From NCBI GenBank assembly GCA_965637545.1, contig OZ281498.1, forward strand, positions 13,082,001 through 13,146,000: DNA of 64,000 nt, given 5' to 3'. A program made the translations under genes and the position numbers. The first letter of the stretch is position 1, and the number at the start of each line of letters is the position of its first letter. Source of the stretch: Phallusia mammillata (lineage: Eukaryota). Under the pieces are notes generated by a model. That model had not been told where the DNA came from, did no database searches, and was given only the letters and a program-made list of their open reading frames with translations. Below, piece after piece: positions 4,901 through 54,725 of this stretch.

Positions 4901-6520
4901 GATCATGGGACAATTCGAACATCCCAATGTTATAAGACTGGAGGGAGTTGTAACCAGAAGTCGACCGCTCATGATCATCACGGAATTCATGCAACATGGG
5001 TCGTTGGATGATTACCTCAGGGTATGTGAATATAATGCACAAAGTTAGCAAAAAAGCCGTAACTTTAAGATCGATTTGTTTGAAAAGTTCTGGTCGGATG
5101 TTAAACATGTATTATTTGCACAGGCGAACGAAGGAAAAATTCCTGTTGAAAAACTGACACAATTTCTACACAATATTGCGTCTGGAATGAAATATCTTTC
5201 CGACATGGGATACGTCCATCGGGATCTGGCTGCCCGTAATGTTCTTGTTGATTCTGATCTTGTTTGCAAAGTATCCGATTTTGGACTAAGTCGGGTGTTG
5301 GAAGAAGTTGGGGATGAAGAAATGGCTATGTACACCACTAGGGTAAGTTCAGCGGTTTACCGAACAGTTTCACAACGTAGGCATTTCTGAATCATGAATT
5401 GCATTGCCAAAAATTGCCATTTACTGAATGTTTTGTAATGAATTCTCTATTTGCAATTGATTAACGTTGACCTTTTTTCTGAAGGGAGGCATGATTCCAA
5501 TCCGCTGGACGGCGCCAGAGGCAATTACGCAACGCACATTTAGCTCATCTAGTGACGTATGGAGTTACGGCATAGTGACGTGGGAGATACTTTCGTACGG
5601 AGAGAGACCTTACTGGGAGATGTCTAACCAAGACGTAAGTCGTTTAAAAATTTTTGCACATATAGTCTTATTTAAAATAATTTATAAATGAGGATTTTGA
5701 TGCAAACAACCGATGAAAATTTCGGACAGGTATAAACAAAACCTTTTTACAGGTGGTGCATTTCGTGGATAGTGGATATCGTCTTCCAGCCCCTTGTTAT
5801 TGCCCCAGAATCCTTCATTGCATGATGCTGGATTGTTGGAACAGAGATCGTACGCACCGACCTACATTTAAACACTTGGTGTCGCAATTAAACCGTTTCT
5901 TAAATGACGGCCTGTGTTTCAACGATACCATCAACAACAGGTACTTACAAAAAACATTTGTTCAAATACAAAATGTCCTTATACGTGTTACATACTTTTT
6001 GTTATTAATGGGTTTGTTACAAGTAAAACACTGTTTAACACCCCCTTTTTCCGTTCAGGCCTTACAGAGAACAGGAAGATTGCATTCCTGAACTATTGGA
6101 TCTTTCTTCACTTGGTCAGTGGCTTGAACAAATGCATCTTCTCCAACACAAACCTGCGATGCTTAGAAGCGGATGTGTAACTGCTGAACAAATAATGCGA
6201 CTTAGTCTGAGGTATAAATCAACAAAACAAATTATTACTTTTAGTATGTTTTGACCAAGGCGTAACGCTAAAAGTATTAAGCCAATAGTTTTGCCCCAAC
6301 AAATAGTCATCGTTACGAATTGTTCAATATTAACAACCAAACGTTTTGAGATAACGAAGTATAGTAAGTTTTGCGTTTGATTTTAAATTAACTATTTTTT
6401 TGCAGTGAGCTTGAAATCATGGGCATCGAAGACCCACGTCACATTCAAACTATTCTTCATGAAGCGCAAGTTTTACGTCAAAAGATAGAGGAAGTGAACA
6501 ACAAAGGGATTGCTGTGTGA
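1950..6520 (+). CDS. Eph: Eph receptor tyrosine kinase paralogue 1, 5'-partial (EGF-like, FN3 x2, TM, kinase, SAM, PDZ-binding tail GIAV)
   Basis: Hand-spliced GT-AG exons 1950-2105, 2658-2766, 2912-3056, 3137-3218, 3846-4048, 4156-4504, 4583-4708, 4783-5021, 5124-5342, 5485-5634, 5753-5940, 6059-6211 and 6406-6520 keep one reading frame. Motifs: CPAGKFK..C..CP, juxtamembrane [58 protein letters not shown]. Ligand-binding-domain exons lie upstream of the window. Confidence 0.95.
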
Positions 6521-15300: not shown

Positions 15301-18300
15301 ATGAGCGACGAATGAACATGGTATGTCAAATTACCAAACCGAACCAGGACAACTGGCTGAGGACAGATTACATCGCAGCCGAAGGAGCTCGTCGCGTATA
15401 CGTCGAAGTGAAATTCACAATTCGGTTTGTTGTTCGTTTTGATTTTGATGCGGTGTTTGATTTGGGCATGGTGACTTTAAACATGCGTTCATAGATCGTG
15501 CGAAGATGTACCGAACGTCGCTACTTGTAAAGAAACCTTCAACTTGTATTACTATGAAACTGATCGGGATGAAGCCACCTCGACTTTTCCTCCATGGAGG
15601 GAAGGAGCTTATACCAAGGTGTGCATCTCGTTTACAAGGATTTTAAGCTTTTGTATCAGCTCCATATGATTTATTTACATACCTGTGTTACATGCTCAAA
15701 GAGGCACATAATAAAATTATTGCTGTATTGACAAACCCGATGGCTGTGCTGTCAACCTCCACACCCCTGTGATAACAAATGTTGGTAGGTGGTTATCTGT
15801 CATACACGCTCCGAACGATGCTGAGCCGGCAAGCGGTGTTTTCTTACAGTTTGTTACCGCCCGATAGTTTTGCTAACTTTGGCGCTTCGTCACCCGTAAC
15901 AAGAAGATTTCCAGGATTTACAGCGTTGCTAAGTGCGTCGAGCTGAGAAATCGTTTGAACGTTTGAATCGTCTAAATCTGTTAGAAACTTGCGCCCTTTC
16001 GCAGTGCTTTAGTTGCCCGTCCACAAGATACCTGCATGACTAATGGGATTAGTTGGTAGCTGTACAAAGCAAAGTTATCGATTTCCATTTCACATTTGCT
16101 TGCAACGCAACTGGACTAACAAATGTGACAGTAGTACCAGATCAAATGCGAAGTAACTAGATTACGCGTCTGACAAGCGTCGATTGATTTGGAGGTACTT
16201 CATAGTGTTTGTTGTTGCTACAAAACCAGCTTCTTCGGCGTCAGGTATTGCGTTTCACCACTAACCTTTCACATACAATTCCATAAGATGTTTTTCACCA
16301 CAGCAGCATTCGTCTTATAATTATCATTCCGTCAGGTAAACTGATTAGTGATGACATAAAATCTTAATCATGTCCTGGGAAAATACAAATTGACTTACCA
16401 AGGAAAAAAACGTTTCATAACCCGTTTACAAACATTTTACGTTCATCTTAGGTCGATACTATAGCAGCCGACCAAAGATTTTCACCAGGGTCAGACGACA
16501 GTAACTTCGAAACTCGTCATATCGGACCCATTACAAAGAATGGGCTATATTTAGCCTTTCAGGTAAATATTTGTAACGAAAAGCTAAATCTCAGATTTCC
16601 GATTGTGTTCCAATACCCACATTAACCTCTAAACCCGGATCCGAGCAAGACGAGTAAACAAAGCAGGTTGCACGTTTTCGTAATGGACGTCCGATAATAC
16701 TAGATCCCCCTTCCGACAAATATCCAACTTCTATGTGATTACAGAATTTACGGTTGCCTGCACGATTTACTCTAAAACAAAGCTACCACATCCTTGTTGG
16801 TCGTGGAGAAAAGCATGTTGTGTAATACAAGTTATCCATTATGCAGGATACAGGTGCTTGCGTGGCGCTCATGTACATACGGGTTTATTATAAATACTGC
16901 GAGGAATCAATTAGCAACCTTGCCGTCTTTGGACGAACCACAGCCGGATCCGAGATGACGTCACTAGTGGACACTACTGGAACCTGCGTGAAAAATGCAG
17001 TACCGGTAAGAAAAATCTCTTTCCTAAATAAGTTTTCAAAGGTCTTTTATTCGAGCTCATAACGCCTTTTTCCACGTTCAATTCGTCTCTACATCATGTG
17101 GAAAAAATGGGCAAAATTATTTGCATAAAATGTTTGCTGTAGTGTGTTTTGTGATCAAGTCTTACAGGGCTTTGTAATAACGTTTGCGGTTTAAGGACAC
17201 GATAGTTCACATGTTTTATGAACATTATAGGTGTTAAGAAAGTCTAATTTCCATCAAGGTGGTAATTTTGTTTCAAAAGTCTGATGGACATAAATCCGAA
17301 GGAAATTCCATTTAGATTAAAAAGCCGATGTCTGCAAATAGAACTTTGTGGTTTGAGTGTGACAGGCGGAACCCTGAATATAAACTTCGATTGAATTAAA
17401 ATTCTTTCACCAATTTATAATCGATTTAATACAATCCATTTGCGAAATTTTAAAATGGAATACGAATTATTCGAATGCAGACGAACGGAATGCAACCAAC
17501 ACTTTACTGCAACGGGGAAGGAGATTGGATGGTTCCTTCTGGAACTTGTACTTGCGACCAAGGATATCAAGTTAACGCCGATACGACCAAGTGTACAGGT
17601 ATTACTGCTTTGTAACTTGTGCAGGCAAATTTAATTTTGCTCCCAGATTTGAATATAGGCAGGTAGAATGTCGAAAACTGTTTTGCTGGTCGATACTTAA
17701 TAACCTTGTTTGCACGTTCATTTATCGGGACTTGATTAAGCTGGATTGCCGCCCTCCAAATCCTTGGTTGCAGCTAGTTAGGGCCGGCGTGTAAGCTATT
17801 AACGTCCCAACCCATTGGCGTGTATGCTCTGCATTGCAACAAACGCTACCATTATCTGCGTGTGGCTCGCAGAAAGCTTTCACGTTGGCGATTGATGCTA
17901 CTTGATGCAAGGACCAGTTTGGGGTTGCAGGCGGTTCGGATTCTCAAGCGCTCTTGTGTGCTCCGATAAGACGCGGCTCTTGTTAATTCTTTTCGTCTTC
18001 TCTGTCCGCCAGGCCTCATTGCTTTGCTCAATGGTGATTTATTACCCAAAACACAATTAAGTCGCCTGGGCTCCATAGTGTGAGCGTCTTGAAGTGAATA
18101 CAATGCCGCGCGGCTGTCATGGTCGATTGCCCGTCATTCAGTGGACACGGTGACCGGGCGATAAGCAGCACGCCTCCACTAAGCTTCTAATGTTTGATTA
18201 ATAGCCCCTTGGCAGCGCCAGATCGCTGCAGATTAGATCGAATCGCATCGGGTTACCGTGTAGAGTGCTTGTCTGTTTCTTTCTGTAAAAGTTTTTTGAC

Positions 18301-21300
18301 AATGCATTGGTTGCTATTTAAGGCAAATACCTTGGAGTTTATTGAGCGAAACTTAGAAAGCTGATTACAAATGCAATTAATTAATTAATTAGATTCTTTC
18401 ATATTCAGGTCGCCTCCTGCAAATGATTTACCAACAAACATGTTTGCACCATGCCACCTTCAGAGTCTAGGATTTAATCGTCGAATTACTCAAAAATCGT
18501 GACATGTGACGTTTGCTTTTAATCCTTATATTTAACCACTTGTCTGTTTGGGAACAAACTTATTAGCATGGCGTACCTCACTGTAAGTTCCGATGTCTGT
18601 TTTAATAAGCATTAAAATCCGGTGTATTTAAGCCAAATCCTGTTGTTAAACTACACGGAGGAATTCTGAATACACCGAATTCGCAGTTTGTAGACTTTAA
18701 CCTGCGCTTTTCTCTTGACCGTCTAGTTTTTGATTAAATTTAGGTGTTTTGCGTGTTGTTAACAACTGTCCGACATTTGAGTGTGAATTCTTAGCCATGT
18801 GACTGAGATCCTAAGTGGCCCGGTACACGGATCAGATAGTTCCTCGCGTTCTTTCGTCGCCTAATTCTTCCAAAACACGGTTACTTGCGCCAAGCAGCGA
18901 CAGGCAACCACTAATGTGTTATTAATATGTTGTTTGTATACATAAACGGTTGCTTCTAATGAACGGATTAGTTCATGGAGAATGTCCACCTGACAGAAGC
19001 AGATATTCTGTTAGGTTTTCAGTTAATATCAATCACTCATAGAATAGGACCTTCCAACAGTATTTCGGTCATTTTAAACCAATATGTTTTAAAGCCTAGC
19101 ATCTTTTATAAAACTACACGAAACTTTATTGCCCGTTTTGTCTTTATTAGGGTAGTGACTTTTGCTATATGTTTGAAACATTAAGTGCAGTGAAACGCAA
19201 AATAAAGCAAGGCTGATTTGAATGATGCAGAGCTTTTATTGCAGACGTCCAAAATTCACAGATTTGACAACGACACTTTGTCGCGCCTTTCCAAATCCGA
19301 GTAAAAATCTGTTCCGGCCACCCATCAAATTTTCCTCCAAGTTCGTCAACTTAATCTTATTAGCACTTACGTATGACTTATTTCCCAAACAGCTGAAATC
19401 GCATTTTGTTAATTACAGTTTAAACGTTGGTGTAACCGCCGCGTCCTAAACAGAACCTAATTTGAACATATCGATTCACGACTGTCAGATATCGTTTGTT
19501 GCGCATATAGGATAGTTTTGACATCGATTAATACGAAGTCGTGTATGGCATTAATGAACTTCTCATCACAGTTGCATGTCTCGTGTAGCATGGAGACGTT
19601 TCGAAATTGCTGCACACAAACCGAGTAATAAAGCTTCTCTATCCAATGCAATCCATCAAATTCAATTTAAACAATCGATCCCGCATTCTCGTCACACCGC
19701 CCGACGTGTTATTGTGAAAGTCCTTGTTTTGTTTGTGTTAATTTTCTTATGTTCGCCTCTCATATCAGTATTGGTTGCCTATTGTTTACGACAGCGAGCT
19801 GGTTGGACGTGTACAACTGACCCCAAGTGACCTGCTGACCGGGTCAACGCTCTCTGCGAGATCTGCGATACGGTTGTTTGTTTGTAAATTATTCGTTAGT
19901 TATCCGTTTTGCCCAGTCACTTTTTATTACCTTTCCAGTGGTAACTTGCTGAACTTGTTTTTGTTAATGTTATTGCTGCAAACTTAATTTCAAGCCAGTA
20001 GACCATTTGGGCAATGTTAGAAATGGCTTTATTAAATAATTAATCAACCGCAATTCTTGCTGATAATTTACCTTTACGTCAATCAGGTTTCACCTCCTAA
20101 CCTACCAGGGACCATCGAATCCACGTAAATCCTTTAATACGTCAATTTGTGCTTCCCTTGGGCTATTAATGACCCAAACACTAGAGCGGCTATAAATGAC
20201 CCAAACGTGTATGTAAGGGTAATTTTTGGGACAATGCATTCTCGTACTTTGCCGAAATTAATTTTCCAAGCAATTATTTTACGATGGCTTCGGGATTTTG
20301 ATAGTTCATGACTTAATTTGACGACAGAGCGTAACGGCTGCGAGGGCAAAAGTCGTACATGTACGTGTGCATTCATGTGTGGAATTGTTAAGGGGATACA
20401 CATTGTTTGTTTGGCTTAAGTACTGCGGTTGACATACGGCAATCTTGCAAAAACTGATTGTATGATTCATAGCCGCTTGGAAGCTAAAAAATACTGTTTT
20501 CGGAGTTGATTTTCATTTTGTGATGGTGGCAGTTTTCAGTCACAATACTTTCTCACCTGTGCGTTCCCCATTTTTAGATGTAATCGAATGCGTTCAGCAA
20601 TTAACCGCGATTTATAACACTTGGCTAAAAAACTGGGGATGGTCAAAGTTGCACTTTATTGTAAACCCCGGCACTTGGCCCCGCGGTGAGAAACTTGCGG
20701 TAAATCTTTATTACGGTGATCGCGTTTCAGGCCTGCTGCATTCACCAGACCCCAACTGCTGGATACATTTCAACTAGTCGTGCGCTGTTAAACCTGTACA
20801 ATCGGGGGCTGTCAGCGCCTGTTTTAACCCCGAGTTTGAAGCATCGGTTGTTCGGAAAAAGGCTCCTGCGTGGCAAATTAAACACTTTTGTTTTTGGTCG
20901 TTAGCTCTGAATGGCCCCGTCCACTTTGGAGCTTGTTTTCTGCCCATTAACTTTGCGTGCGCAGCAGGAGTCTGTTATATCCCGATAATCCCACAGAACA
21001 ATCTTTTCTAAAAGCCGCGGTGTCTGCAAAACTTTGAATTTTTTCTTGCGTAAAAAATGGGCTTGGAGATTACATTGGTGAAGTGGAAAGAAACGAGCGT
21101 ACTTTCAAACAAATGAAAATAAATCACTCCAAATGTCAGACAACAACTGCCATAAAACGTTGTTGGGCTGGAAGAGGATTAAATCCGCTAAACAGTAAAT
21201 TTAGCCTTGTGCTGTGCCAATAACAAAAATGTAGAGCAAATTTTACGTGTTTCCATTTCCCTCCAAAACCCCACCGATCAATGTAATGTTTGTTTGTCCT

Positions 21301-24300
21301 GTCACAGTTGTTCGAACTTGCGGAAATGAGGGTATTACCACTTGTAGTTGAATAATCACTAATTATTTGGGGCTGAGGTAATTTTTTTAAATGCATGCTT
21401 GATTTAACGCCTAATGCTATTACATTTGCACTGAAAAAAGTCAAGTGAATTTGTTTTTGGCTGCAAGTTTTTATTTCAGCCTTCTTATCGTTTGCTCTTT
21501 TGCTTTCACAGCTTGTTCCCCTGGATACTTCAAATCGAGCGTGGCAAACAGCGATTGTGAGCGCTGCCCTGCTTTTAGTTCGACCCGCGGACGAGCGTCG
21601 ACTTTCTGCCGCTGCACGTACGGTTATTTTCGGCCTCCCACCGACGGCGTGGACAAAGCTTGTACAAGTGAGTGAATATGCATTTACCGGCAAAGCCACC
21701 ATAATTGGATTACACCATTCGGTTTTCAACTAGCACTTCGCATCCCGGCTCGCCGAGAGGCTTTAAGAACAAGCGTTTCCTTTGAATTAGACTTGGACTG
21801 AGTTTGAACACCAACCACTTGCGTTGACGACTCATTGCCCAGTTAACATACCGGAATGAAGTATTTTTGGCGCCGGTCGTAGTTTATTTTAGGAAGTGCT
21901 TTATGTTTGGATGTTTTGCCGACAGCAACGCCGTACCATATGGACCATTTTCAGGTGCCTAACCGGATTTGTCAAGTGTATGTAACAAAATTGTCACTGG
22001 CACTATGCAATATTTCGCTGAATGTAGTAATATTGTTGGACAGCATTGGGTCATCGCGCGTTTTTGTGAAAGTGTGTAATCTGCTATAAGGAACTGTCTG
22101 ATTTAAATACTATACAAGGAACTGCACTGCACAGACAACTGTTGTCTTGCTCGTTCAGCAAATATTTAAAATTTCACCAGTTCATCAAGGTTCCGACGGG
22201 CCACGGTCGTTTGCCGTGAATAAACTTCCACGCGGCTCGTCGTAGTCAAAACATGCCTCTCGTGCCAAATAAGGTTGTGTTGGGGGTGATGCACGTAAGT
22301 CGAGCCCCGCTCCAGTTCTGTTGTGTTGCGGAGATCGAAATGCCAGTAGACCGCAAAGATTTCAACGAGCTTCGATCCTGAATGTCGAGATATGTTGGGT
22401 CAGCTGGGTTTTCGCGTGCCAGCTTACTTTCTCTCCCTATTTCCTTACGAATAACTGTTACCGCGGTGACTAAATATTGACCCTGTCCGTCACAGTCAAA
22501 GATTGTTAGGTTGGCGACCAGGTGGGCATGGTGATTTCATTGCGGTATCAATGCATAGGATTTCAGCAACCGAGTAACCTGCAGTCGTCTAGGATATTTT
22601 GTCGAAGAAATCCAACTCCTCTTTTTACAAGCTACCGTGCGGTTTCTCTGGCAATTGTCCGTCCGTGTTTGAATGTTGAGTGCTGCTTCCGCTGGTGCTT
22701 GAGGCCTTTTGGAACAAGACAAAACCTTTCGTGACATGCCATTCCTACTAGTAGCGTGGAAATGGCTGGTGACCTTGCTGGGTGTCACAACACATTTTTA
22801 ACTTGCAAGGAAGCGCGTGTTGACTTTTTGGTTGCAAAAGTCGACAAACCGTAACGAAAGGATGTTTCAGTCGACAGTTGTAAATTAACTTCTGGTGCTC
22901 GTTTAGATCTGGTCGCATTCACGTCCACTGCCTGTCGGCGTCGTTGGTTCAAAGACAGGTTTAAGGTACTTCACACTTGTGCGTGGTTTAAATGCGTCTG
23001 GAAAGTTTAACACTTCTTAATTTAAACCGGTTTTGTCCTAACTCTTTCACCACAGTCTGCTTCCCACACCTGTCAAGAGCAATGTTACAAAACCGCAAAC
23101 CTGTACGTTCGTTTAATCACAACTGTATAAATGTCACGCGAAATTATATTTCCTGTTGTCGGACAACTTAGCCGGAACTATATACCTGTTATATTTTGTG
23201 GTCATAAAGCTATTTTTAGACCCGAAGCTTGTTTTGCAAAATCAGTCATCGCCCTCGAACTCCTGAAACTGGCAGCGTGGCCAAACCAGGATTTGCTGAA
23301 AAAACTTTAACGCAGCGTCGCGCTTTGATTTCGAACACCGGAGAGGCAATGTTCGCTGCTGTTCGTCGTATGCGATCGGTCAGGATCGAGTGACCCGATT
23401 GACCAGCAGCAAGTTTCCATCTGCGGGTCGTTTGTTTTAATTTGCGCAGTGCTTGCATGGCAAATCCCGCCACTTGAGCCGACGATCGTATGTTGATATT
23501 TTGCCATGCGCTTCTGGCAAAAAGACCACTGGAATTCGGTTCGGTTCTCTGCGCGACAGACGAGGTAAAATGCGCGCCACAAAGTTCCCAAAACAATGGA
23601 GGTAATACAACGCTTGCCTTCCAGTGTACAAAATGGGATTTGCTGATGCGTGTAATCCTGCTTGGTGCATTTTTACGTGTAAGGGTACAGTTTTATTGCA
23701 TCTATCAGATGAATGTATCAAACGATGTGCAGTTAAACCACGTATAAGCTATCCCAAACAATTTCCCTATTTTGGTAAACTTGTGTTGGCTGGGAATAAG
23801 GTTGATATACACCTCACTGGCCACACCAGATAAACAAACCTTGAGTGCAGGGCTACAACGACGCCTCTTTGTCCAGTTCCTTTGTTTGTACGCTGCAAAT
23901 TGACCACATCGCACCGGACCAGCCAGTTCGTAAACTTCCAATCGCCCAGCCTGACCCCGTCAGTATTGCCGCATATCACCCCTTCACTGTTTGCCATCCA
24001 CGCCAATTCTGAGGCTTAATGGATCGGCAAATAGCGATCCTGCAAATCTATCTGGGTTGCGACCTTATTTGATACATTTACGTCGCACTGTTTACGTTGG
24101 ATTACGACGATCTGACGCGCAAGTGTCACTGAAACTGATATCCAGCTCCTAAACCAATTTTGCTTTGCCAACTGTAGGCGATAAAAAACAGTTAAACAGA
24201 ACTTAATCGTTGCCACTGAGATATGTTTGTATTTGTTTTTGTTGACTTACGTTATTTTCGGTTTTGGCTCAGGAAAACAACGCTATTAAAATTATAGCCT

Positions 24301-27300
24301 ATCCGTTCACAAAATTCTTGTTATCTCTTCCTTATAGGCTTTTATACTGTAAAATTTATAGCGGATACTTATTTCCCGTTTTGAAAATGTTATTACTTTA
24401 TAACCATGTTGTGAGTTCAGATTTGTAATTTTGCTTTTCAGTGCCTGCTTCTAAACCTCGAAACCTATATTCCGTTGTTAATAAAACATCGGTTCATCTT
24501 TATTGGGAAAGACCACAGAATGATGGCGGGAGGAGTGAGCTGTGGTACAGGTAAGATTATACTCTACTTAAAACAGTTCTGTTGCAGATCAGTGAGATAA
24601 GTGAACTAAAGAAATCAAACATATATGTTTAATGTGTATTCGCGTTGTAAGATATAAATCTTTTTTAAATATCATGTTGGGAATGCAAAGTAAGATACAC
24701 ATTGCAGTAAGGCCTTTCATACAGTCATGTGTCAGCCATATTGCTACACAAACGATCGCGTCTTTCAATCGTTTTTCTCGAGGAATTCAATTGCTGGTGG
24801 TTAATTACACCTCACACGCGCCAGGTCCGATCGGAAACATCGGCTTAAATGAAAAGTATTGATAAGTTCCATGTGAAAATCACGTGTCTACGTCCTGTCC
24901 CGCCCTCTCGACCAACCTATGATTGCTGGTCAGACTTGTAATTCGCTTCGTGAGTTGTATGTTTGATTGTTAATTGACTGGCCCAGAACGGTTCAACATG
25001 GGCGTTTTAGACTATTTGAATTTAAATGGCAAGGTTTGCAAATTTTTCTTCACCTTCGCCTGTGTATTCTATTATAAGTACAACCCTCGCACTGGTAGTT
25101 TAATGTAACCCGGCACCGAGCATCAACCAAGTGGCGAAGTTAACGACCTGTCACGTTAGTGCTGTAAAAGCCAGTCAAAATAACATAGTCGCAGAGCAGT
25201 AAAATTATGGAATGCGACCAGTGTCTGGTTTCAAAGACCGCTTTCGCTAGAAACAACATTCACCCCTTAAGGGTATTAAGTCCTTTCAAAAATAAAATTG
25301 AAAATTTCCTTAAACATTAAGTGTCTCAATTTCAACTAAAATTAAAATTGCAAATAGCATTTAGTTTACACAGCTTTCACAAACTGGTAACTTTACATGT
25401 TAGAAGTAGCATTGCAATCTAAGGCAACGTGTGTGCACATCACAGTATCACGACAATCTTTGATGTGTGCAAAAGATATGACATGCATAACACAGAATAT
25501 ATCCGTATCTACAACAGCCCACGGCAAAACGTTCGTGTACGATGGAAGAAACGCTTGTCGTGCTCGGCCGAATTCGACTTAACGCTTGCTTAACTTGTCA
25601 AGCACACTGTTTTTGACGGGCGCAAACGCCACAACATCTGCCGCAGTCAAATACAGATTGATTGTACGACTGATTGTAAGCCTGCAATAGCGTAATCCCG
25701 TAATGTGCTCCGCCTTGCTAATGCGCTGCTTGTGCCAGCTTGTGAGAACGAACCATCTTGCAGCAGGTGATAATAGCAAAGACGCCCGACGGGTGGTCTA
25801 TACCCATCAAACCTCTCACATTAGGTGGCAAAGCTTGAAGTGTGAGCTTACATAATGTAGGAATGTTAAATTCGAAATAAACTATACGCGGTGGATGACA
25901 TCTCATAGACGAATACGTTTATCCCAGACCAAAATTCCGGCTTGAACATAATCCCCCAAACGCCCAGGCTGTTTATTGCGCGTACTTAATGCAGCGTTGA
26001 TCGTTACAAACCTGTCAATCATAGTTACAGCGCGTAATGGAGTTGTTATGCAACATCTGGAGATGCCAGCGTTCCAGATTCACAGAATATTGGTCTAAAA
26101 TTTTGAGGACGGAAAATGACAAATGCTTTTTTAAATACATTTCAGCATCCAATGCTTTCAATGCCAGCTTGGTTTTGTGGCCTGTGCCCCATGTTCTAAC
26201 CAGGTTCATTACGACCCCTCACCAGAAAAACTCATTCAAACGGAAATTGCAATCAAGTCTCTGAGCTCCTATGCATTTTACAAGTTCCAGGTAAAAGTTT
26301 ATGCACATTTGGTGACATCAAAATAAGTTATTACACTTTTCTGTTGCAACATGTACACTCAAGTATATATGCTCTTGGTTTGGTTACCTTTTGAATATCT
26401 AAAGTTTGAGATTGGCCTATACCAGAGTTAGTCAAACATGAAGGGATTCATATAAATATTCGACCACGAGATGACTTAAAAAACTATTGTTCTATCTATA
26501 CTGTTTTCATTATGAGAATTATTTTCACTGAATCAGTGATAAATTCCACTAAGGCGAAAACGACCTGAAAAGGTCATGAAATACTGACCTAGAGATGTTT
26601 AAGTATCGTGGACGAATTCGCTTGAAATCCCGTAAATTTAATCCCATTTTGTGTCAATTCTGCGAACAATCAAAGAGTGAAGGATTTATGAGTTTATGGG
26701 TTAGTTTCAATTATGTTGCCTTGCTCCATGACTTTGTTTGTATTCTTTAAATTCTTTAAATTCATATCTTTCTAAATTTGCTACATAACAAGAAAATTAA
26801 CCCAACTACCCTGGATAACACAGCTGGTAACTGGACTTAATCTAGTTTTCGTGCATGCTGTCGAATTTTGGCTTTTTAGAATAGCCGTTATCGCATTGCC
26901 GCCATATCTTGAAGCTTGTGGCCGCCAACCATCTGCTGTATTGACATCGTTGTGGCTACCGGATGACCTTATGATATAGCACCAAATATAGTTTGTGTGA
27001 TTAGCGTCGACAACATAAATTCCACACTTTATTGTCGGCTTCTAATAAATTTGCCTTGGCAGGTTTTATCGATAAATGCTGTGACAAACATCGCCGCGTC
27101 GTCTGGACATCGCATCAACAACTTTGCTGAAATCACTGTACAGACTAACCAAGCAGGTAAATTACAAATTACTCTAGGAATTTTTAATTATTTCATGTGA
27201 GCCTCAAGTTGGTTAAAATGCGTGGGAAATAGCAAAACTTCGAGAAACTGATTTGCTGCGTATAAACAGTGCCACGAAGCAATTTTATAAATTTTACATT

Positions 27301-30300
27301 TAACGTACGCAAGTCAACCTCACAAATCATCGATCAACCGATTTTAATTAAAGGTGGGCCGGTAATGTAATGAAGGTCGGTTGTGGGAGTTACAGTGAGA
27401 GACCCAAACGACCTGGGGTTGTTTTCAAAACTTCAAATGTCTGGGAGAGCAGCAGTGCTTTATGTAAGGGGGAAGACAAAGTCGAATGCTCCATTAGCTG
27501 CTATTGAGTGTCGTGCTTAGGGTGAATACTTGGTCTTTGCAAAAATCCAAATGACGTCAATGATAATCCATGGCGGTTGCACGACATTTTGAACCTCCAA
27601 ATAAGTCTTGTGTAGAGGTTAGACAAAACGGAAATTATGTCGAACCTCATGCAGTTGGCCCCACCCGGAAGGGGTAGATTTTCATTTACGAACGTAATGC
27701 GATTTCCAAGTTAGAAATATGATAAATGCCCAATTATTCATCACACATTCGCTTTGATTTGATGATTCACTTTAATGTAAGAACAACCATTTCACGCTTG
27801 AACGAAAATGCCCGTCGGTGAGTCACGTGGTGACATGACTAGGATACCTGCTCGGATAAACACAACTTGCACACTTGTATTGAAATTTCGTCCACCAGCT
27901 TAGGATGCGTCAACCAGGTGACAGACGTTCGTTCCGATATAAGTCATGCCACTTACCGTCAGCTTAGGGATTTGACCAATTTTTGTCAACAGTGAGTAAT
28001 TTCACGGGCTTCTGTGATCTTGAGTTCATATCGTTTCAGCGCCTTCGGCTGTTCTCGACGTCCGAGTGTCAGAAGTCGAACCAGACTCGTTTTACGTGTC
28101 TTGGAGTCCACCAGCAACCACCAATGGTCAGATTGTCGATTATGAAGTGATGGTTACATCGCTTGTGGACGGATATCCAGCCCCTTCCAGTGGCGAATAC
28201 ATAAACCGTACAACGGCTTTGCGCATTAAAGTGGAACCTCTTAAGCCATCATTTCGCTACATCATAAAGGTAATAGGATCTAAAAACATACATGCACCAG
28301 TATGGAATTTGCCGCAGGGCCACGTCTATATTTACTCGGTGCCGTGTAATCGAGCTTCGGTTGCATGTACATCGCATCGACCTTATACACACAGTATTCG
28401 TTGTTTTTTTTGTTTTTTTTCATTTCTAATATTTAAGGCTAAGCAACTTTTTACACAATTATGTTAACTTTGTTTAATTCACGCAGGTCAGAGCAAGAAC
28501 AAAAGAGGGTTATGGACCATTTAGCGCTCCAACCCGCGCCAAAACTGGTAATCGACCGACTGTCTCAGCAGAAAATCATCAGAGTGGACCTGAACCTGGG
28601 GTTGATATCTTACAACTCATCCTTGCTGTGGTTGGCGGAGTGGTACTCGTTCTCGCCGTTGTCGTCGTTATCTTTATTTGCCGAAGGTGAGTCTGAGGGC
28701 ACACGATTGTGATCAAGCTTGAATATTGGGCTCCTCCAACGATGGATGGCTTTCTTAAGTGGCTGTACTCTTTTGGGGGGACATCGATCCTTTTGCCTGC
28801 CAAAACGCCTATTGTGAATTATTGTTTTTAGCTTGTCTTATATTGAGTTAGTCTGACATGGTTTATTGCTAAAATTGCAACTGATGGATGTTGGTTTTAT
28901 TGCACATCCCCGATAATTCTTTTGCGTTGATTGCGCTGATTCGGTAACGATCTGTTAGCACCAGCGTGGTTTGTATCGATCCACAGCTTGTAGTATTAGA
29001 GCGGTCTTTGCGGTCAGGTAATGACCAAACATGGCGCGGAAATCGTTCCTGCCAAACAGGGTTGTTTACGGGCAGTTACGAAACAACGGCGCTTCGGTTT
29101 CCGAGACAAATCATCATTCATCGCGCACGATCTGCGGTTTGCTGCCTCACAAAATCCTGGCCTGCCTGACTAACGTGTCACGTGATCGACTTAATCCCCG
29201 CGGTGTGGTAAAGTTGATGGGATCGGGGTTTGGTGCGACATTTAAAAATGGTTTGAAACATTCCACCGTTTGCATAGGATCAATGCAGAGTACCTGAGCA
29301 AAGGCTTATCCGACCATAAAATGCGATTGACGCTGTAAGGTATATGAGACAAACTTTAAAACTGCAAGCTTAATATGTATGCCCTGGCATTTATGCACAG
29401 TTGATTGCGTGCGATCAAACCACAATGTGCCTGAAGTTTAGGTTGAGTGCGAAAGGCGATATTGCAACCCGTCATTGTCGGTTGTTACAACTCATATCGT
29501 TGTAAGTTTTGCGATGAGTCTGGGCTTGTGTTTAATCTTTCTGCATTAGTTTTGAAATCCATGCCACCCATGCTTATCAGGCAAGCGCAGATAGACAAGT
29601 TATACCACTGGCCGCTTGTCACGCAATATCTTTCACTTGCTTGAACTCTTTCTTAGCTTTACGTGATACAAGGCGTGACCCCGCCTTTATATACGCGGCA
29701 CTAGGGCGTGTCTGTGGTAAATGAAAATAGACTTTATGCATTCTTTCTTAGGTTGAAAGTAGCGTTGCATGGTAACGGGCATAAATATTTTAGAAATCTA
29801 GTTTTCAAAACTGAAATACGATCGTTTTGCAGTTGAATAAAACGTAAAATATACTGAACAAATAATAATTAGGAGCAGTGGATTTAGGTTCCAAATTAAA
29901 TAGGATTGTTGCAAGCAGTGGATTTAGGCTCCAAATTAAATAGGATTGTCTGGCCAAAATCAAGATATTGCAAATCGTTATTTGAAGTAATAAAATAAAA
30001 CGTGCTGAAACGTTGTTTTAGGCGTACAAAGGCGGCGAAGTCAGAAAAATCGGACGAGGAGAAGCGGCCGATGTTCAATGGAAGTTCAGTGAGTTTCAAC
30101 GGGTCGTTTCCATCCCAACACAAGACCTACATTGACCCAACCACTTACGAGGATCCACAAAGAGCCGTGCGAGATTTTACCAAGGAAATCGATGCTTCGT
30201 GTGTAAAGATCGAAGAAGTTATTGGAGGAGGTAAGTTTGGGTCCCCTGTATTTCAAAGGTCAAGTTTTGAAACTCAAAGACTTTTAGTTAAATACCATAG

Positions 30301-33300
30301 CGATATAAAAGGTTACACGAATGCCTACTAATCTGACAGCATTATATGCACACTATTAACATTTTTTTGATTTTGGAAAGTATTTGTTTGTTTTCTGTAT
30401 TTTTTACATTAAGCATAATTTTATTTTTTTCTATTTTATGATTTGCCACAAGCTATTTCTGGTGAATATTTATTATTTTCGGTTAAAAATGCCTGTGCAC
30501 TTTGTGATTAAATACGTCTGGTGCCAATCTTAATCCATCGTCTTAGACATCGCGAAAGTCTCGCCTTGAGTTGCATGATGAGCGATGTTCCGTCCCAAAA
30601 ACGTGAGATTAAGGACGCGACGCTATCTCCGGTGCATCTAAATCCTGTTAATTTGCGCAGTCACGCTAAAAGGCTTCTCTAAAACAGCAGCAGTGATAGA
30701 ATAAAATGCCGATACGACACTGCTGTTTCTGTAAAGGTTACGTACGTAAGCTGCTATGTAGGCACGCAATAAAAATTCTCTTGAATAAAGCGTGACCGAA
30801 TTTCCTGTAGTAACCTGTCCTTCGCCAATTTTTGCGACGGTCTTTCTCTGTTCTCTTTGTCCCTGGAAGTGGCGCAAAACAAATGGTAAATCTTAAAATC
30901 ACAAAAATGTGGGAAGACCAGAGCAGATTCACACAAATGAAAAGCGATAAACATCCGCACCCCAACCCTGTCGGCAAATAACGTGAAGATGTCTTAAATG
31001 ATATGGGAGCAGTCACCACTAAAATATTTGATTTTACACAAAATATTACAAGAAATATACTTTTGTCTTACTATAGTTGATTCCATTACAGGCGAATTCG
31101 GGGAAGTTTGTCGTGGACGTTTGCAACCAAACAACAAAAGTGAACGAGACGTAGCGATTAAGACTTTGAAATCGGGCTACAGTACGCAACAAAAATTGGA
31201 TTTTCTCGGCGAGGCATCAATTATGGGCCAGTTTGATCATCCCAATGTCATTCGACTCGAAGGTGTTGTTACCAAAAGTCGACCGTTGATGATCATCACC
31301 GAATTTATGGAAAACGGCTCACTTGACGTATTCCTCAGAGTAAGTCAATAGCTTTTCCACTGCGTGGTAAACAGGCTGTACCATGAAAAAGCAGTATTTT
31401 AGCATTACGCCAACAGGTGACCTAAATTGGCCACAAGTTTAAAACGCGGTAGTTAATCGGTATTTGTGTACATTTGCTTTGTTTGTCATTAGATATCGGG
31501 CGTCAACGTCAATCAGCCTGTAGAATTACGTAGTCGGCATTGCATAGTTGGGCTTGTCCGTCTTGCTGTCTGACAACTGTTATCTGCTCAGTTCCGTGCT
31601 TTCATCCATCAACTATTAGACTTCATGCTGTGAAGTTGACTTTGGGAAGCCCGGGTACCGTGAACATCCATACTTTTCAAGCGAAACGGCAAAGTATAAT
31701 GAATCTCAAGGGCAGGGAAACCGGGAAAGTGCCAAATCGAGGGATTTAGTTTCAAACCCGTCGTATTTTGGCATGTGTTTTCAGCCAATCCGCTCTCTGC
31801 AGATGATTATCGCAACCTGATAAGAGGCTTGTAGGTGGTGCGTCTGCCCAATGATGCATCTTCGAAACAACAGTGCGCTTGGCCCTAAAACACGACCTTT
31901 CATGGCAACAGGCGATGGAGCGTGAACGCCACTGAAATAATAGAGATCAAACACGTTTTGAGTGAATATTTGTCACGTAAACTAGTATTTGTGCGCAAAG
32001 TAAAGTACATGAGAGCAATGTCCCCCAGTCGCATTCCGTTTTTCGGGGACAAAACTCGCAAATTATTGACCCAAGCATTAACAGCTTAACGCCAAACGAT
32101 AGCTCGGTATCAGGTTACTGCAACCTTGAGAAACCAGTTCACAACCTCACAAAAACGTAACCCACCGATTTTCATTAGATTATAAGCAGGAAAATTGAAA
32201 AATTACGTCCTGGTTTGGGCAAATTTGTGGAACATTAAGCTATGCCTGAGTTGTTTGTCCCAAGCAATGCCTTATACAGACATTTCACAAATGCCATCTT
32301 GGGTGTTTAAAAAATTATGTTGCATTTTGCTTAACTTAATAAATTCAAACGTCACTTATTCATTGTAGAACCACGACAACCAGTTTACTGTGATCCAACT
32401 TGTCGGAATGCTCCGTAACATCGCAGCAGGAATGAAGTATCTTTCCGACATGGGTTATGTGCACAGAGATTTGGCTGCACGAAACATTCTTGTTAATGCT
32501 CAACTGATTTGCAAAGTGTCCGACTTCGGAATGAGTCGCGTTTTAGAAGAAGACTCTGAAGCTGCTTACACTGCCAGGGTAAGCTTAAACTACTGACTAA
32601 AATGCATAAGTGTAGTCTTTTATTTTTTTATCTGAAAAAAATATTGTACTGATTTTGTTAAATCGTTGCAGGGAGGTAAGATTCCCATTCGCTGGACGGC
32701 GCCAGAAGCATTCACCTTTCGCAAATTTACGTCGGCCAGTGACGTTTGGAGTTATGGAATCGTCATGTGGGAAGTGATGTCATATGGAGAGAGACCTTAC
32801 TGGGGAATGTCGAACCGAGATGTAAGTAATCTTTAACATCTCCAACTTATGTGTTTCCACCTATTTTGCTAGAGTTTTATTTCGTGCTTACAATTTGCAT
32901 TGCACTAAAGGTCATGAATGCTGTGGAGACTGGATACCGTTTACCAGCACCAATGGATTGTCCACAAGTTCAACACCGACTCATGCTTGATTGCTGGAAG
33001 AAAGATCGCAATCAGAGACCCAAGTTTGCACAGATTGTTGCGAATCTTGACAAAATGCTCCGAGAGCCAGCTCAGCTAAAGATCAAAGCCGGCCACGAGT
33101 AAGTTGTTAACCTGACATCTTTTTTAGGTGAACCAAATTAACTTTTTAACAAAGTGAAATGTTTTTATTTGGTCACAAACGGCTAATGTAAACCCGAACT
33201 AATTAAAGTTAACTGTACAAACTGTTCGATATATTAAGTAAAAAAATCCAGCTGACTACTTTGCAATCTTTAGCATTTTCCATCCCTCAACAATATTCAG

Positions 33301-34632
33301 TTGAGCAAATTTGTAAAGGTTAATTTGGGTCACTTTTGTTTTTCCTTTAGACGACCGCGAAACGGCAGGATCCCCAATGCCCACGGCCGCCCAACATCTG
33401 CACTAGGCCAAGCAACACCCAAACCTACCGACAACGCTCCTGCTTCCAGGACTGCATCTCCACCTCCGCACTCCTCATCCAATGGCGACTCTGGATACAG
33501 CAATGAGGAGACTGATGAGGATGTTCCCTTCATGACGACAACGAATGAACAGCTCAAGGCGGATTCTGTCAATGTTTCATCCTTAGGAGTATGGCTGGAT
33601 AGCATTGGACTTTCCCACTGCAAAGAAAGTTTTACGAGAAACGGTTGCACTTCACTTGAACAAGTTCTGCAGCTAACTCATAGGTAAGATCTGCAAACCA
33701 AATTGGAAGTACGTGTTTTAGCAAAGAACTTACCAAAGCATTAAATATTACTGTGGTGGAATAGTATTGGGATTAATACGAATTGGTTGTTTTAATTTAG
33801 TAGTTTAGCAGCCTTATTGTTTCATTTTATAACTTAACACTGAATGCGTATGACAATTACGATTAAAAGTAGTTTCAAATTTTGAAATTTTTGGTTACAG
33901 ATTAACATTTGTCTGCGTAGTAGTTGTGAGTTTACTACAATATTTTTCCTGTAAGCCTGAAAACGGCACCAATGTGCCGGGATTAATACAGTGACTTTAC
34001 GCCCCGTCAAGTTTTCCACCTGACTTAGTTCAAGTCAAGTTGAGAGTTTATCGCACAAATCTTGGGGTCATTGGGTCGACTGACGTTGGGGCTTGGGGGC
34101 AACGCTTCGTTGGGTTCGCGTACATTCTTGACATTTCGTCTGAGATGAAAACCTTAAACTCATTGTCTTCGCACCACAAAAATTCCACCCGACCCTGGCT
34201 TTCTGTTTTGTTTGATTTAAGATCTATAGGCCCTGCGCATCCGCGTTTAGTCTGCTGCCAAGTCGACTTGACAGCCAACATTTTGTATGCAAACATTTTT
34301 ATAATGGGTAACTACGTCAGCATAACGCTAATGGAGTTTAATAAGTAAACGCGATGTTGTTTTATTGTAGATTACTCACTATATAAGTATTGTGTGTTTC
34401 AAACACATTTATATTTGCCACAAATCGCAAACATTTTCCTATTTTGTGTCTCAACAGTGACATGGAACGAATGGGAATCGACAGCACAGAAGATCAAGAT
34501 CATCTCATTGAAACAATTCAGAAGATCTCGGGACAACAGGAAGAGCACCAAGATGCAGATCAAAGTAGATCAGCATCGACCATGTTACCTTCCTATAACG
34601 AGAGTCAACGTCTCACAGGGATTTCTGTGTGA
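9319..34632 (+). CDS. Eph: Eph receptor tyrosine kinase paralogue 2, complete, 20 coding exons, about 1092 aa, C-terminus GISV
   Basis: Exons 9319-9415 (signal peptide), 13536-13600 ([14 protein letters not shown]), 15267-15424, 15495-15618, 16452-16562, 16847-17005, 17481-17598, 21512-21667, 24442-24550, 26146-26290, 27063-27156, 28040-28269, 28487-28686 (TM), 30022-30230, 31092-31339, 32369-32578, 32672-32821, 32911-33098, 33351-33683, 34458-34632. All are GT-AG with consistent phases; total 3279 nt. All Eph domains and catalytic motifs are present. Exon 1 is the least certain. Confidence 0.95.
12592..12639. repeat. 16-bp direct repeat flanking an A-rich tract
   Basis: ATTGACATCCTAATGT at 12592-12607 and 12624-12639, separated by AAAAAAAAAGAAAAAT. 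Confidence 0.85.
29874..29949. repeat. Tandem duplication, period 40 bp
   Basis: AGCAGTGGATTTAGG(T/C)TCCAAATTAAATAGGATTGT starts at 29874 and at 29914, with one mismatch over 36 nt. Confidence 0.85.
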
Positions 34633-35366
34633 AAATAAACTGAACCGGTTGAGACCAACCTATGTATGAGTTGAATTTGTCCGAGAGTACAGAGCATAAA
34701 GTGGAGGAAAAACTTGATGGCAAAACGCTTCCGGCTGATTACAAAGTTCGGCATACTGTGCACATTAATTGACTTTGTGCGAGGACACATTGTACAGCTC
34801 AGGCCCATGACCAACTAATTTGCGCGTGAAATCGCAAAATCGACAATCATTTGTATTTCTGTTTGTCAGCTTTTGGGATTTCGTATGTTGCTTTGTAGTT
34901 GTGTGCAATTGTTGTTTGAAAGTTATATAATAACGTTTAGACATAAAAAATTGCTGTAAGTTGAAATCGTTTATTTCATCTCTGGTGTTTCTTGTTCGGA
35001 TCGCTATGTTCCTATTTTTCTTTCTTTTTGTTACATTATTATCTATGGTGTGCTTGCACACTTCGCAAAGTGGCTGTCAGCAGTATCCCAACTCCTTATT
35101 ATGCCTTGATAAGCTTTCAAACACTCCTGGTGAATGTGGTTTGCTTATAAAACACGCTGTATTTGTCTACAATAATAATACTTTTAAATGTTTAAATATT
35201 TCAATGTTGGTCGAAGTGCCTAATTTCATCGAAATTAAAACGCAGGTACTTTAAATTGGTGGGTACTTTAAGTTTACCTTTATCATATTCCTACTAATTC
35301 GCACACTGCTATTTATATGTTGCTGTATTTCCTTTGCTATACAGAATCGGGCAGATCTGTGTACTA

Positions 35367-35376
35367 AATAAATAAA
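35367..35376 (+). terminator. Candidate polyadenylation signal of Eph paralogue 2
   Basis: Overlapping AATAAA hexamers (AATAAATAAA) about 740 nt after the stop codon, followed by a T/GT-rich tract (TTTGTCGTTTTTTC). Confidence 0.45.
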
Positions 35377-36178
35377 AACCTTGTGAACTATTTGTCGTTT
35401 TTTCAACGAACAGTTTTCTTGCCTGCATCAATTTTGCACACTTAGGCCTTCTTTTTTGTTTTTCTCTGCAGCTAAAAAATAATCATGTTTCGCATGTATA
35501 TTGTAAAAATTTAAAGGTCCAAACGTTTTTGTTTTATTTTATTAATTTCAAAATGTAACGTTAGTTAATTTAAAAAGTAACGTGTGCAACTCAGAAATGT
35601 GCAATAAGATGTTCACACTCTGAATTTTTTATACATTTTAGAATAAAATTGAGATTATTTTATATCAAACGTATGTTGGCGTGTAACTACGTAGCTCATA
35701 ACCGATATCTGTTTTGGAATTTGTCACAAACGTCATAAACTGTTACCCAAGGGCATTCATCGATACTTTACAAACAATGGAACGGTCATTTCTTAACGAC
35801 CTGCTTCTACACAGGTCAATCCGACACATCAAAAGATTGATTTTTAAAAGTTTAACCTGATTTATAGAGCACCCCGAAAACTCATACTGCAATACTCCTT
35901 TTGTTATCCGATTGTGGTTAGCATGATTCAAAGTTTAAGTTGGAAATAAAGGCACGGTACTTGTTAGGATTAATGCTGTTTTAGCCTTCTACCACAAAGT
36001 CTCATGATATTTATCCGCTGATTGATTGAACAGATGTTGATTTTTGTTCACCAAAAATATTTGCTTTTTATCTTGCTGTATACCTCTAGTGGGAACTGAG
36101 GGAGCTTATAATTATTGCATTTAAAGTCGTCTTTTTTGCATTAATTTTACCTGCAAGGCATGGTCGAAGACAATAATG

Positions 36179-36198: not shown

Positions 36199-36836
36199 GA
36201 TTATAAATTTAATCCGTTAAGTATAGGACAAATATATTTTCTTTTCAGTTTACTTTCAGACGCAATCTTGAAGAAAAAAAACAGGTGAATATAACTTATA
36301 CATACTCATTACTATCTCCACAATTGGTAAAGATTTTATCTGTATACTTTTAGCAAAGTTTATTGGTTGCTATTGGAAACTGAGCACAGTGAACAAAACA
36401 AAATAAATAAAAAGTGGAGAAACAGCTAAACGCAAAAGCATCAAGGAAACGATTTGGTTAGTCAACTATGTTGCACGCAAATGTGGCGAAGCATAGAAAA
36501 AAAAACTTTGACACAAGTTAAACACGTTAGAAACGTACTTTGGTAGCTCAACTTTGGTAATCAATACTTTATGTCAGCGCAATCTTCAAGAGTCCGCTAT
36601 AAGCGCAATCGTCAAACATACAAGAAAGGCATAAGACGGACATGATAAATTAAGCGTAAGTGAGTACAGGAAACATCAATATAATGCGCAGGAGCAAATG
36701 GTATAAATAGAAAAGTATTGCTTTGGGTGCCCTATATTCTCGTGTCGTTATTTCCAGTCTATCTCTTTTTGTTTCATCTGAGTTGGATCCATTCCAATAA
36801 TGCTTTCACATCAAAGACGTTGATTGCAATTTGTTT

Positions 36837-54725
<17,889 letters not shown>

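What the first reader, a model, noticed from the sequence alone, without database searches (positions are those of the whole stretch)
32729..32814. 86-bp perfect identity between inverted Eph paralogues: recent gene-conversion tract in the kinase C-lobe
Eph-2 32729-32814 is 100% identical to the reverse complement of Eph-3 38156-38241 (28 codons, [28 protein letters not shown]). Codons just before it in the same exon differ at most third positions (ggt/gga, aag/aaa, ccc/cca, att/atc, gaa/gag), and the adjacent introns show no evident similarity. Protein-level selection does not preserve synonymous sites, so recent non-allelic conversion is the simplest reading. Eph-1 differs at many positions across the same stretch, which serves as an internal control. 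The fold-back geometry of the convergent pair may favour exchange; that part is inference.
Basis: partly seen in the sequence, partly recalled or inferred. Interest (0 to 1): 0.72.

Follow-up and report, generated by a model that had tools for sequence, protein, structure and literature searches.

The report
Gene conversion between convergent Eph genes
Two neighbouring, tail-to-tail Eph receptor genes of a tunicate have repeatedly copied short stretches of their kinase-coding exons onto each other; this is a clean but ordinary case of gene conversion, and it means kinase-based family trees of these genes will mislead.

Summary
Window 32729-32814 equals the reverse complement of 38156-38241, 86/86, with a mismatch on each side. 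Contigs from three independent DNA studies break exactly at both copies and carry the 86-mer as a separate piece at about double depth, so it is not a polishing error. RNA contigs show both genes spliced.

The interpretation, non-allelic gene conversion, is supported. A deeply diverged relative ("R", one 57.9-kb metagenome contig) holds orthologues of both genes in the same convergent layout. Juxtamembrane, SAM-linker and non-island kinase codons group by orthology, so the duplication predates the species split. Inside the tract all 8 informative sites group by species: E2-E3 0 differences, R2-R3 2, each orthologue pair 10. The orthology tree is rejected there (AU p=6e-6). Nucleotide-level constraint therefore cannot explain the identity.

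The tract is the youngest of three sub-exonic conversion islands in the kinase domain. All three are also homogenised in R, so conversion recurred in both lineages. Each tract border lies next to residues that distinguish the two paralogues in both species.

This is a new instance of a well-known process. I found no paper reporting it for Eph genes.

The parts
32729..32814 (+). Conversion tract, Eph-2 copy (island C), 86 nt. Encodes kinase subdomain IX / alpha-F ([28 protein letters not shown]).
   Evidence: Exact identity to the reverse complement of 38156-38241. 8 species-grouping sites and no orthology sites. Collapsed 86-nt contig at double depth in 3 DNA studies.
38156..38241 (-). Conversion tract, Eph-3 copy (island C).
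32672..32821 (+). Eph-2 kinase exon K3 (150 nt, GT-AG). The tract is bracketed by paralogue-diagnostic codons: F/I at 32711-32713, F/Y at 32717-32719 and R/Q at 32816-32818.
   Evidence: Splice sites. RNA contig joint 32577/32671. Pfam PK_Tyr_Ser-Thr 2.3e-21. Diagnostic residues shared with the orthologues R2 and R3.
38149..38298 (-). Eph-3 kinase exon K3.
   Evidence: joints 38297/38390 and 38047/38147.
32390..32493 (+). Island B, Eph-2 copy: 101/104 identical to Eph-3 38476-38579. Encodes alpha-E and the catalytic loop HRDLAARN. Older than island C (block pS 0.44).
   Evidence: In the relative, the same region holds a 116-nt exact run between R2 and R3.
38476..38579 (-). Island B, Eph-3 copy.
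   Evidence: (I1).
31166..31263 (+). Island A, Eph-2 copy (VAIK lysine to beta-4, including alpha-C). pS 0.38 against Eph-3 39401-39498. Only species-grouping sites.
   Evidence: In the relative, a 113-nt exact run between R2 and R3.
39401..39498 (-). Island A, Eph-3 copy.
   Evidence: (I2).
13535..35304 (+). Eph-2 gene: ligand-binding, cysteine-rich, FN3, TM, kinase and SAM exons. The 3' end reaches at least 35304.
   Evidence: Paralogous exon map, Pfam domains, spliced RNA contig ending at 35304.
36413..52367 (-). Eph-3 gene, convergent with Eph-2. The 3' end reaches at most 36413. About 1.1 kb between the two 3' ends shows no RNA contig.
5485..5634 (+). Eph-1 exon K3, the internal control (21/86 differences in the tract).

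Best explanation
The 86-bp identity is a short non-crossover tract of interlocus (non-allelic) gene conversion between two old, convergently arranged Eph receptor paralogues. Shown: Eph-2 and Eph-3 duplicated before this species split from the relative R. Within three sub-exonic islands of the kinase domain, the two genes of each species are far more alike than either is to its orthologue. Outside the islands they sort by orthology. Inferred mechanism: a break in one exon is repaired off the paralogous exon 5.3 kb away in inverted orientation (synthesis-dependent strand annealing), copying roughly 90 to 120 bp without crossover. Once a segment is homogenised it offers perfect homology for the next event, so the islands sustain themselves. 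Tracts that would overwrite paralogue-specific residues (F/I, F/Y, R/Q next to this tract) are either removed by selection or blocked by mismatches. Island C is the most recently converted in this species. Islands A and B are the most recent in the relative.
For: The identity is exact and real in three independent DNA data sets. Quartet site patterns in the tract are 8 species-grouping, 0 orthology and 0 cross, against 6 and 28 in the flanks through K4 (Fisher p=2.5e-5). Differences in the tract: E2-E3 0, R2-R3 2, E2-R2 10, E3-R3 10. pS for E2-E3 is 0.00 in the tract, 0.38 and 0.44 in islands A and B, and 0.65-0.92 elsewhere. For R2-R3 it is 0.12, 0.05 and 0.05 against 0.53-0.92 elsewhere. Orthologue pairs are saturated at 0.8-1.0. 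AU tests reject the orthology tree in the tract (5.9e-6) and in the three islands (1.8e-82). They reject the species-grouping tree in non-island kinase codons (0.0037) and in the juxtamembrane plus SAM-linker protein (0.00077). A shared one-codon indel and many shared replacements join E3 with R3 and E2 with R2. Introns are unrelated in both species. The R sequences recur in separate metagenome assemblies. The longest exact run between orthologues is 26 nt, against 86 (E2-E3) and 116, 113 and 70 (R2-R3).
Against: No conversion event was observed directly, and no polymorphic tract was seen in the three DNA runs. A Sawyer-type permutation on silent polymorphic sites of the kinase-only, four-sequence alignment is weak for E2-E3 (p=0.10; all sites 0.013), because only 10 polymorphic sites fall in the tract. 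The borders of islands A and B were drawn after seeing the patterns, so their AU values are inflated. Eighteen nt (GGAGAGAGACCTTACTGG) are the same in all five genes, and E-R pS in the tract (0.62) is below that of other regions, so part of the identity would exist without conversion. Flanking identity of about 80% is low for homologous repair, so how the first event was seeded is unexplained. Only one relative species carried both genes.
Confidence: 0.9

Rival explanations
1. Nucleotide-level constraint, such as an exonic splicing enhancer, an RNA structure or a small-RNA site, keeps the same 86 nt in both paralogues without any exchange.
For: An 18-nt purine-rich stretch (GGAGAGAGACCTTACTGG) is identical in Eph-1, Eph-2, Eph-3, R2 and R3. 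Between-species pS in the tract is 0.62, against 0.8-1.0 elsewhere.
Against: Each orthologue pair differs at 10 of 86 sites, Eph-1 at 21, the fourth Eph at 19 and a further relative (L005) at 13. Eight synonymous sites changed in parallel in both paralogues of one species or the other. Equally conserved motifs ([13 protein letters not shown]) do differ synonymously between Eph-2 and Eph-3.
Confidence: 0.05
2. Assembly or polishing artefact: one copy was overwritten from the other.
For: Inverted near-repeats 5 kb apart can mislead polishing.
Against: Contigs from three DNA studies (2018, 2020, 2024) all break at both tract borders, carry the 86-mer at about twice the flank depth, and show no alternative letters inside it.
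Confidence: 0.01
3. Eph-2 and Eph-3 are young, lineage-specific duplicates and the tract is a leftover of the original identity. The ectodomains simply evolved very fast.
For: Kinase exons are 83-91% identical while ectodomain exons are 48-63% identical. Tunicate Eph expansions are described as lineage-specific (PMC6993872).
Against: 35 orthology-supporting sites, a shared codon indel and many shared replacements tie E2 to R2 and E3 to R3. The species-grouping tree is rejected outside the islands. Synonymous sites between E2 and E3 are saturated between the islands. The same convergent layout is present in R.
Confidence: 0.03
4. Chance combined with codon bias in a highly conserved peptide.
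For: The peptide matches vertebrate Eph exons at 27 of 28 residues, and 6 of the 28 codons are Met or Trp.
Against: Codon usage alone gives 10^-11.5. A permutation within the kinase domain gives p=0.001. The same-codon fraction at identical residues is 0.31-0.40 in most ectodomain exons.
Confidence: 0.005

Closest known systems
Long-lasting interlocus gene conversion and concerted evolution in linked protein-coding paralogues (for example the mammalian gene pairs of PMC2720389, seen by title and abstract)
   Same: Stretches of homogeneity, with paralogues more alike than orthologues, persisting across deep species splits. The method is the same: paralogue against orthologue similarity.
   Different: Here the islands are sub-exonic (about 90-120 bp), lie in receptor tyrosine kinase genes of a tunicate, and the two species compared are saturated at synonymous sites.
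[quoted passage not shown]
   Same: A mosaic of converted and unconverted segments. Unconverted segments are read as being under selection for paralogue-specific function.
   Different: Here most of the gene is diverged and conversion is confined to three small islands. That selection sets the borders is inferred from shared borders in two species and was not tested.
Arm-to-arm conversion in large palindromes (primate Y ampliconic palindromes) and in inverted gene pairs such as Drosophila Hsp70Aa/Ab (from my own knowledge, not checked here)
   Same: Intrachromosomal, non-crossover exchange between inverted copies a few kb apart.
   Different: Those arms are near-identical over kilobases, including non-coding DNA. 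Here introns and intergenic DNA share nothing detectable, so this is not a palindrome in that sense.
Tunicate Eph receptor expansion (PMC6993872)
   Same: Several Eph genes in one tunicate genome. The domain architecture is the canonical one.
   Different: That paper reports lineage-specific expansion, and a text search of it found no occurrence of 'conversion'. The present data show that at least this pair is older than a deep species split and only looks young in its kinase core.

Membership tests
Interlocus (non-allelic) gene conversion / concerted evolution | Within the tract, paralogues of one species are more alike than orthologues between species | tested here: met
   E2-E3 0, R2-R3 2, E2-R2 10 and E3-R3 10 differences in 86 nt. 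8 species-grouping sites and 0 orthology sites. AU rejects the orthology tree, p=5.9e-6.
Interlocus (non-allelic) gene conversion / concerted evolution | Flanking sequence keeps the orthologous history, so the duplication is older than the speciation | tested here: met
   Non-island kinase codons reject the species-grouping tree at p=0.0037, and the juxtamembrane plus SAM-linker protein at p=0.00077. There is also a shared codon indel.
Interlocus (non-allelic) gene conversion / concerted evolution | The run of identity is longer than the background divergence allows (GENECONV/Sawyer logic) | tested here: met
   Run of 22 degenerate codons: permutation p=0.001 within the kinase domain. Codon usage alone gives 10^-11.5. 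Sawyer-type test on polymorphic sites: p=0.013 for all sites but only 0.10 for silent sites.
Interlocus (non-allelic) gene conversion / concerted evolution | Both copies really exist in the genome, so the identity is not an assembly artefact | tested here: met
   Contigs from three independent DNA studies, with the 86-mer at double depth.
Interlocus (non-allelic) gene conversion / concerted evolution | A conversion event seen directly (a polymorphic tract, a pedigree or gamete typing) | not testable with these tools
   Logan contigs drop rare variants and cannot phase across the 86-mer.
Eph receptor tyrosine kinase | Ephrin-binding domain, cysteine-rich region, FN3, TM, tyrosine kinase and SAM, in that order | tested here: met
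   Pfam hits exon by exon: Ephrin_lbd, Ephrin_CRD, Ephrin_rec_like, fn3, EphA2_TM, PK_Tyr_Ser-Thr and SAM. Exon order. Closest named protein is a Ciona savignyi RTK.
Large palindrome with arm-to-arm homogenisation (Y-chromosome type) | Near-identical inverted arms that include non-coding DNA | tested here: not met
   Introns are no more alike than shuffles. The repeat finder reports only exon-sized inverted matches of 70-91%.

The most novel reading that the evidence does not exclude
The three conversion islands keep nearly the same borders in two tunicates whose synonymous sites are saturated, and each border lies at residues that distinguish the two receptors in both species. The most novel reading not excluded is that selection, and not homology alone, maintains this mosaic. 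On that reading, the catalytic core (alpha-C, catalytic loop to DFG, alpha-F) of two receptors is kept co-identical by recurrent conversion because the two kinases must stay interchangeable, for example for trans-phosphorylation in mixed clusters or for shared regulators. The activation segment, tail and ectodomain would be protected from conversion.
Probability: 0.25. Interest if true: 0.55.

Novelty: new member of a known kind. Interest (0 to 1): 0.4.

Why it matters
The process itself is textbook, so the value is practical in three ways. First, it is an unusually clean case. It has an exact tract, verified copies, both orthologues in a deeply diverged relative, and opposite tree topologies a few nucleotides apart. 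Second, Eph phylogenies are usually built largely on the kinase domain. In this lineage the kinase core groups paralogues by species, which would make old duplicates look like young, lineage-specific ones. The reported lineage-specific Eph expansion in tunicates (PMC6993872) should be re-examined with ectodomain and linker sequence only. Third, the shared island borders offer a natural map of which kinase residues are interchangeable between two receptors and which are paralogue-specific.

Tried and rejected
- **C. savignyi DNA:** the closest full-length protein (P0125, Ciona savignyi H2ZQT8) has no DNA on record, so a third species with both genes could not be added.
- **Exon-level protein search:** it returned mostly exons with the vertebrate-type 'YWDMS' peptide. 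Only P0001/L005 carried the tunicate-type 'YWGMS' and was used. I identified none of the others as human and did not pursue them. In one search the K3 exon of L014-L026 was compared once with Eph-2, before their origin was considered, and they were not used further.
- **Sawyer-type test on silent sites only:** not significant for E2-E3 (p=0.10). I report it and rely on the codon-run permutation and the quartet and AU tests instead.
- **iqtree:** the first run failed on a thread setting and was repeated.
- **cDNA-templated conversion:** considered because no island enters an intron. There is no support, since no island crosses an exon junction in spliced coordinates and the K2/K3 junction region is the most diverged part.
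- **Species-specific codon usage as the source of species-grouping sites:** considered because GC3 is 0.47-0.49 here and 0.57-0.59 in R. Rejected because such sites are almost absent between the islands and within-species identity is exact over 70-116 nt.
- **Literature:** searches for Eph, tunicates and gene conversion found nothing specific.

Full report
**1. The observation**

Window 32729-32814 (+) and the reverse complement of 38156-38241 are identical over 86 nt, and the bases on either side differ.

The window holds three Eph receptor genes (exon map, Pfam domains):
- Eph-1, about 1900-6212 on the + strand; its 5' end may lie off the window.
- Eph-2, 13535 to at least 35304, + strand.
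- Eph-3, 52367 down to at most 36413, - strand.

Eph-2 and Eph-3 are convergent, tail to tail. The exons the paralogue map found at 13.5-17.6 kb and 48-52.4 kb are their ligand-binding exons, not a separate gene.

Kinase exons with GT-AG borders:

| Gene | K1 | K2 | K3 | K4 |
|---|---|---|---|---|
| Eph-2 | 31092-31339 | 32369-32578 | 32672-32821 | 32911-33098 |
| Eph-3 | 39325-39575 | 38391-38600 | 38149-38298 | 37862-38049 |

The tract lies inside K3. The other 64 nt of that exon pair carry 14 mismatches.

**2. Is it more than chance?**

- At residues identical in both proteins, the fraction of identical codons is 0.31-0.40 in most ectodomain exons and 0.56-0.76 in the kinase exons.
- The tract holds 22 degenerate codons, all identical. 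Codon usage alone gives 10^-11.5.
- A permutation restricted to the kinase domain gives p=0.001. That background is conservative because other converted blocks raise it.
- Equally conserved motifs ([13 protein letters not shown]) do differ synonymously between the two genes.
- Eph-1 differs at 21/86 and a fourth Eph elsewhere on the contig at 19/86.
- Flanking introns are no more alike than shuffles.

**3. Is it real DNA?**

One 6000-base stretch covering both copies was laid against contigs of three DNA runs from three studies and one RNA-like run.
- In each DNA run, unique contigs stop 30 nt into the tract (at 32758 and 38185) and restart 30 nt before its end (at 32785 and 38212).
- A separate 86-nt contig covers the tract at about twice the flank depth: 180 against 88, 80 against 31+39, and 23 against 9+10.
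- That is the signature of an exact two-copy repeat in a 31-mer graph. No alternative letters appear inside either copy, so mis-polishing is excluded.
- The RNA contigs carry the predicted splice joints of both genes, so both are transcribed.

**4. Relatives**

- The closest named protein is a Ciona savignyi receptor tyrosine kinase. The organism is therefore a tunicate; this is an inference, since names are coded. Its DNA was not on record.
- A metagenome scan with the K3 exon returned one 57.9-kb contig carrying two Eph genes in the same convergent layout, with K3 exons 18.2 kb apart. These are L009 (called R2 here) and L013 (R3). They recur in separate metagenome assemblies: L010 is 99.9% identical to L009, L012 is 100% identical to L013, and L006/L007 cover the upstream part of R2.
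- R is a distant species. Orthologous synonymous sites are saturated (pS 0.8-1.0) and the FN3 exons are only about 40-50% identical in protein.

**5. Orthology outside the islands**

- E2 pairs with R2 and E3 with R3 through many shared replacements and a shared one-codon indel in the K1 loop.
- They also pair through juxtamembrane and SAM-linker motifs.
- AU tests reject the species-grouping tree for non-island kinase codons (p=0.0037) and for the juxtamembrane plus SAM-linker protein (p=0.00077).
- The duplication therefore predates the split of the two species.

**6. Inside the tract the history is reversed**

- All 8 informative quartet sites are of the type E2=E3 and R2=R3 with the two species differing. 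None supports orthology.
- The flanks through K4 have 6 such sites against 28 of the other types (Fisher p=2.5e-5).
- Differences in 86 nt: E2-E3 0, R2-R3 2, E2-R2 10, E3-R3 10. A further relative, L005, has 13.
- The orthology tree is rejected on the 84 in-frame nt (AU p=5.9e-6).
- The grouping of E2 with E3 follows from how the tract was chosen. The independent information is the divergence of the orthologues and the similarity of R2 to R3.

**7. A larger pattern**

Species-grouping sites cluster in three sub-exonic islands. Coordinates are Eph-2; pS values come from the bins, which are slightly wider than the island cores.

| Island | Eph-2 coordinates | Encodes | pS E2-E3 | pS R2-R3 |
|---|---|---|---|---|
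| A | 31166-31263 | VAIK lysine, alpha-C, beta-4 | 0.38 | 0.05 |
| B | 32387-32493 here, to about 32530 in R | alpha-E, catalytic loop; to DFG in R | 0.44 | 0.05 |
| C (the tract) | 32729-32814 | subdomain IX / alpha-F | 0.00 | 0.12 |

- Elsewhere in the kinase domain both paralogue pairs are at 0.53-0.92.
- Exact runs: 86, 33, 29 and 29 nt for E2-E3; 116, 113 and 70 nt for R2-R3; at most 26 nt for orthologues.
- Conversion has therefore recurred independently in both lineages at the same three places. Which island is the freshest differs between the species.
- Islands A and B were delimited after seeing the patterns, so their AU value (1.8e-82) is descriptive only.

**8. Borders**

- The tract is bracketed by residues that distinguish the paralogues in both species: F/I and F/Y upstream (last discordant site 32728) and R/Q downstream (32816-32818).
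- Position 32815 is a change specific to Eph-3.
- The tract is therefore 86 to about 88 nt.
- No island enters an intron or crosses an exon junction.

**9. Mechanism (inferred)**

- A break in one exon is repaired off the inverted paralogous exon without crossover.
- Homogenised segments supply the homology for later events.
- Either selection on the diagnostic residues or mismatch rejection sets the borders.
- A crossover in the tract would invert the 5.4-kb interval and swap the gene tails. K4 and the SAM-linker still sort by orthology, so no net swap has occurred since the species split.

**10. Caveats**

- 18 nt (GGAGAGAGACCTTACTGG) are shared by all five genes, and between-species pS in the tract is 0.62. 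Low degeneracy, and possibly a purine-rich splicing enhancer, therefore contribute to the 3' half.
- The conversion signal rests on sites 32731-32812.
- A Sawyer-type test on silent polymorphic sites is not significant (p=0.10; all sites 0.013).
- Only one relative carried both genes.
- 'Recent' means pS below about 0.17 at 95%, that is, well after the split from R.

**11. Comparison with the known**

Interlocus conversion that lasts across deep splits is documented in other gene pairs (PMC2720389, PMC3728101, PMC3199776; seen, abstracts only). A recent Eph/ephrin phylogeny describes tunicate expansions as lineage-specific, and a text search of it found no mention of conversion (PMC6993872). 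Searches for Eph conversion found nothing. This is a new member of a known kind.
Noticed in passing
window 37045-37259 (last intron of Eph-3): The hairpin element (arms 37109-37154 / 37181-37226, 98% complementary) is extremely repeated in the genome. Summed contig depth is about 146,000 against about 88 for the flanks in run X1, with dozens of variant contigs and loose ends. It behaves like a high-copy MITE- or SINE-like element.
   Followed up: partly
window 15493-15630 (+) and 50009-50146 (-): One ligand-binding-domain exon pair of Eph-2/Eph-3 stands out from the other ectodomain exons: 82-86% nt identity, 89% aa identity and a same-codon fraction of 0.60. It is a candidate fourth conversion island. 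The relative's exons were not available to test it.
   Followed up: no
window 32707: The assembly and the RNA run have A (GAA), while all three DNA runs have G (GAG), the state found in Eph-3, Eph-1, R2 and R3. It is a single synonymous polymorphism 22 nt upstream of the tract and not an extension of it.
   Followed up: partly
G000:C5:12713645-12713777 (L004): A fourth Eph-type kinase exon lies about 370 kb upstream of the window on the same contig. It is 75% identical to Eph-2 K3 and encodes GGKIALRW...YWDMSNDD.
   Followed up: no
P0125 (Ciona savignyi H2ZQT8) against Eph-2: Its K1 exon is 95% identical in protein to Eph-2, closer than the orthologue R2. Its ectodomain exons are only about 38-66% identical, apart from two conserved ligand-binding exons (76% and 95%), and are no closer than R2 where both could be compared. 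This may be another sign that kinase cores and ectodomains of tunicate Ephs have different histories.
   Followed up: partly
window 5494-5522 (Eph-1) against Eph-3 K3 5' part: A 29-nt exact run between Eph-1 and Eph-3 in the [10 protein letters not shown] region, where Eph-2 differs. It is too short to judge.
   Followed up: no
window 29874-29949: Two 36-nt direct repeats 40 nt apart (97% identical) in an Eph-2 intron, just upstream of the TM/juxtamembrane exon.
   Followed up: no
window 35304-36413: The 3' ends of the two convergent genes, as seen in RNA contigs, leave about 1.1 kb with no RNA contig. No sign of overlapping convergent transcripts in that run.
   Followed up: partly
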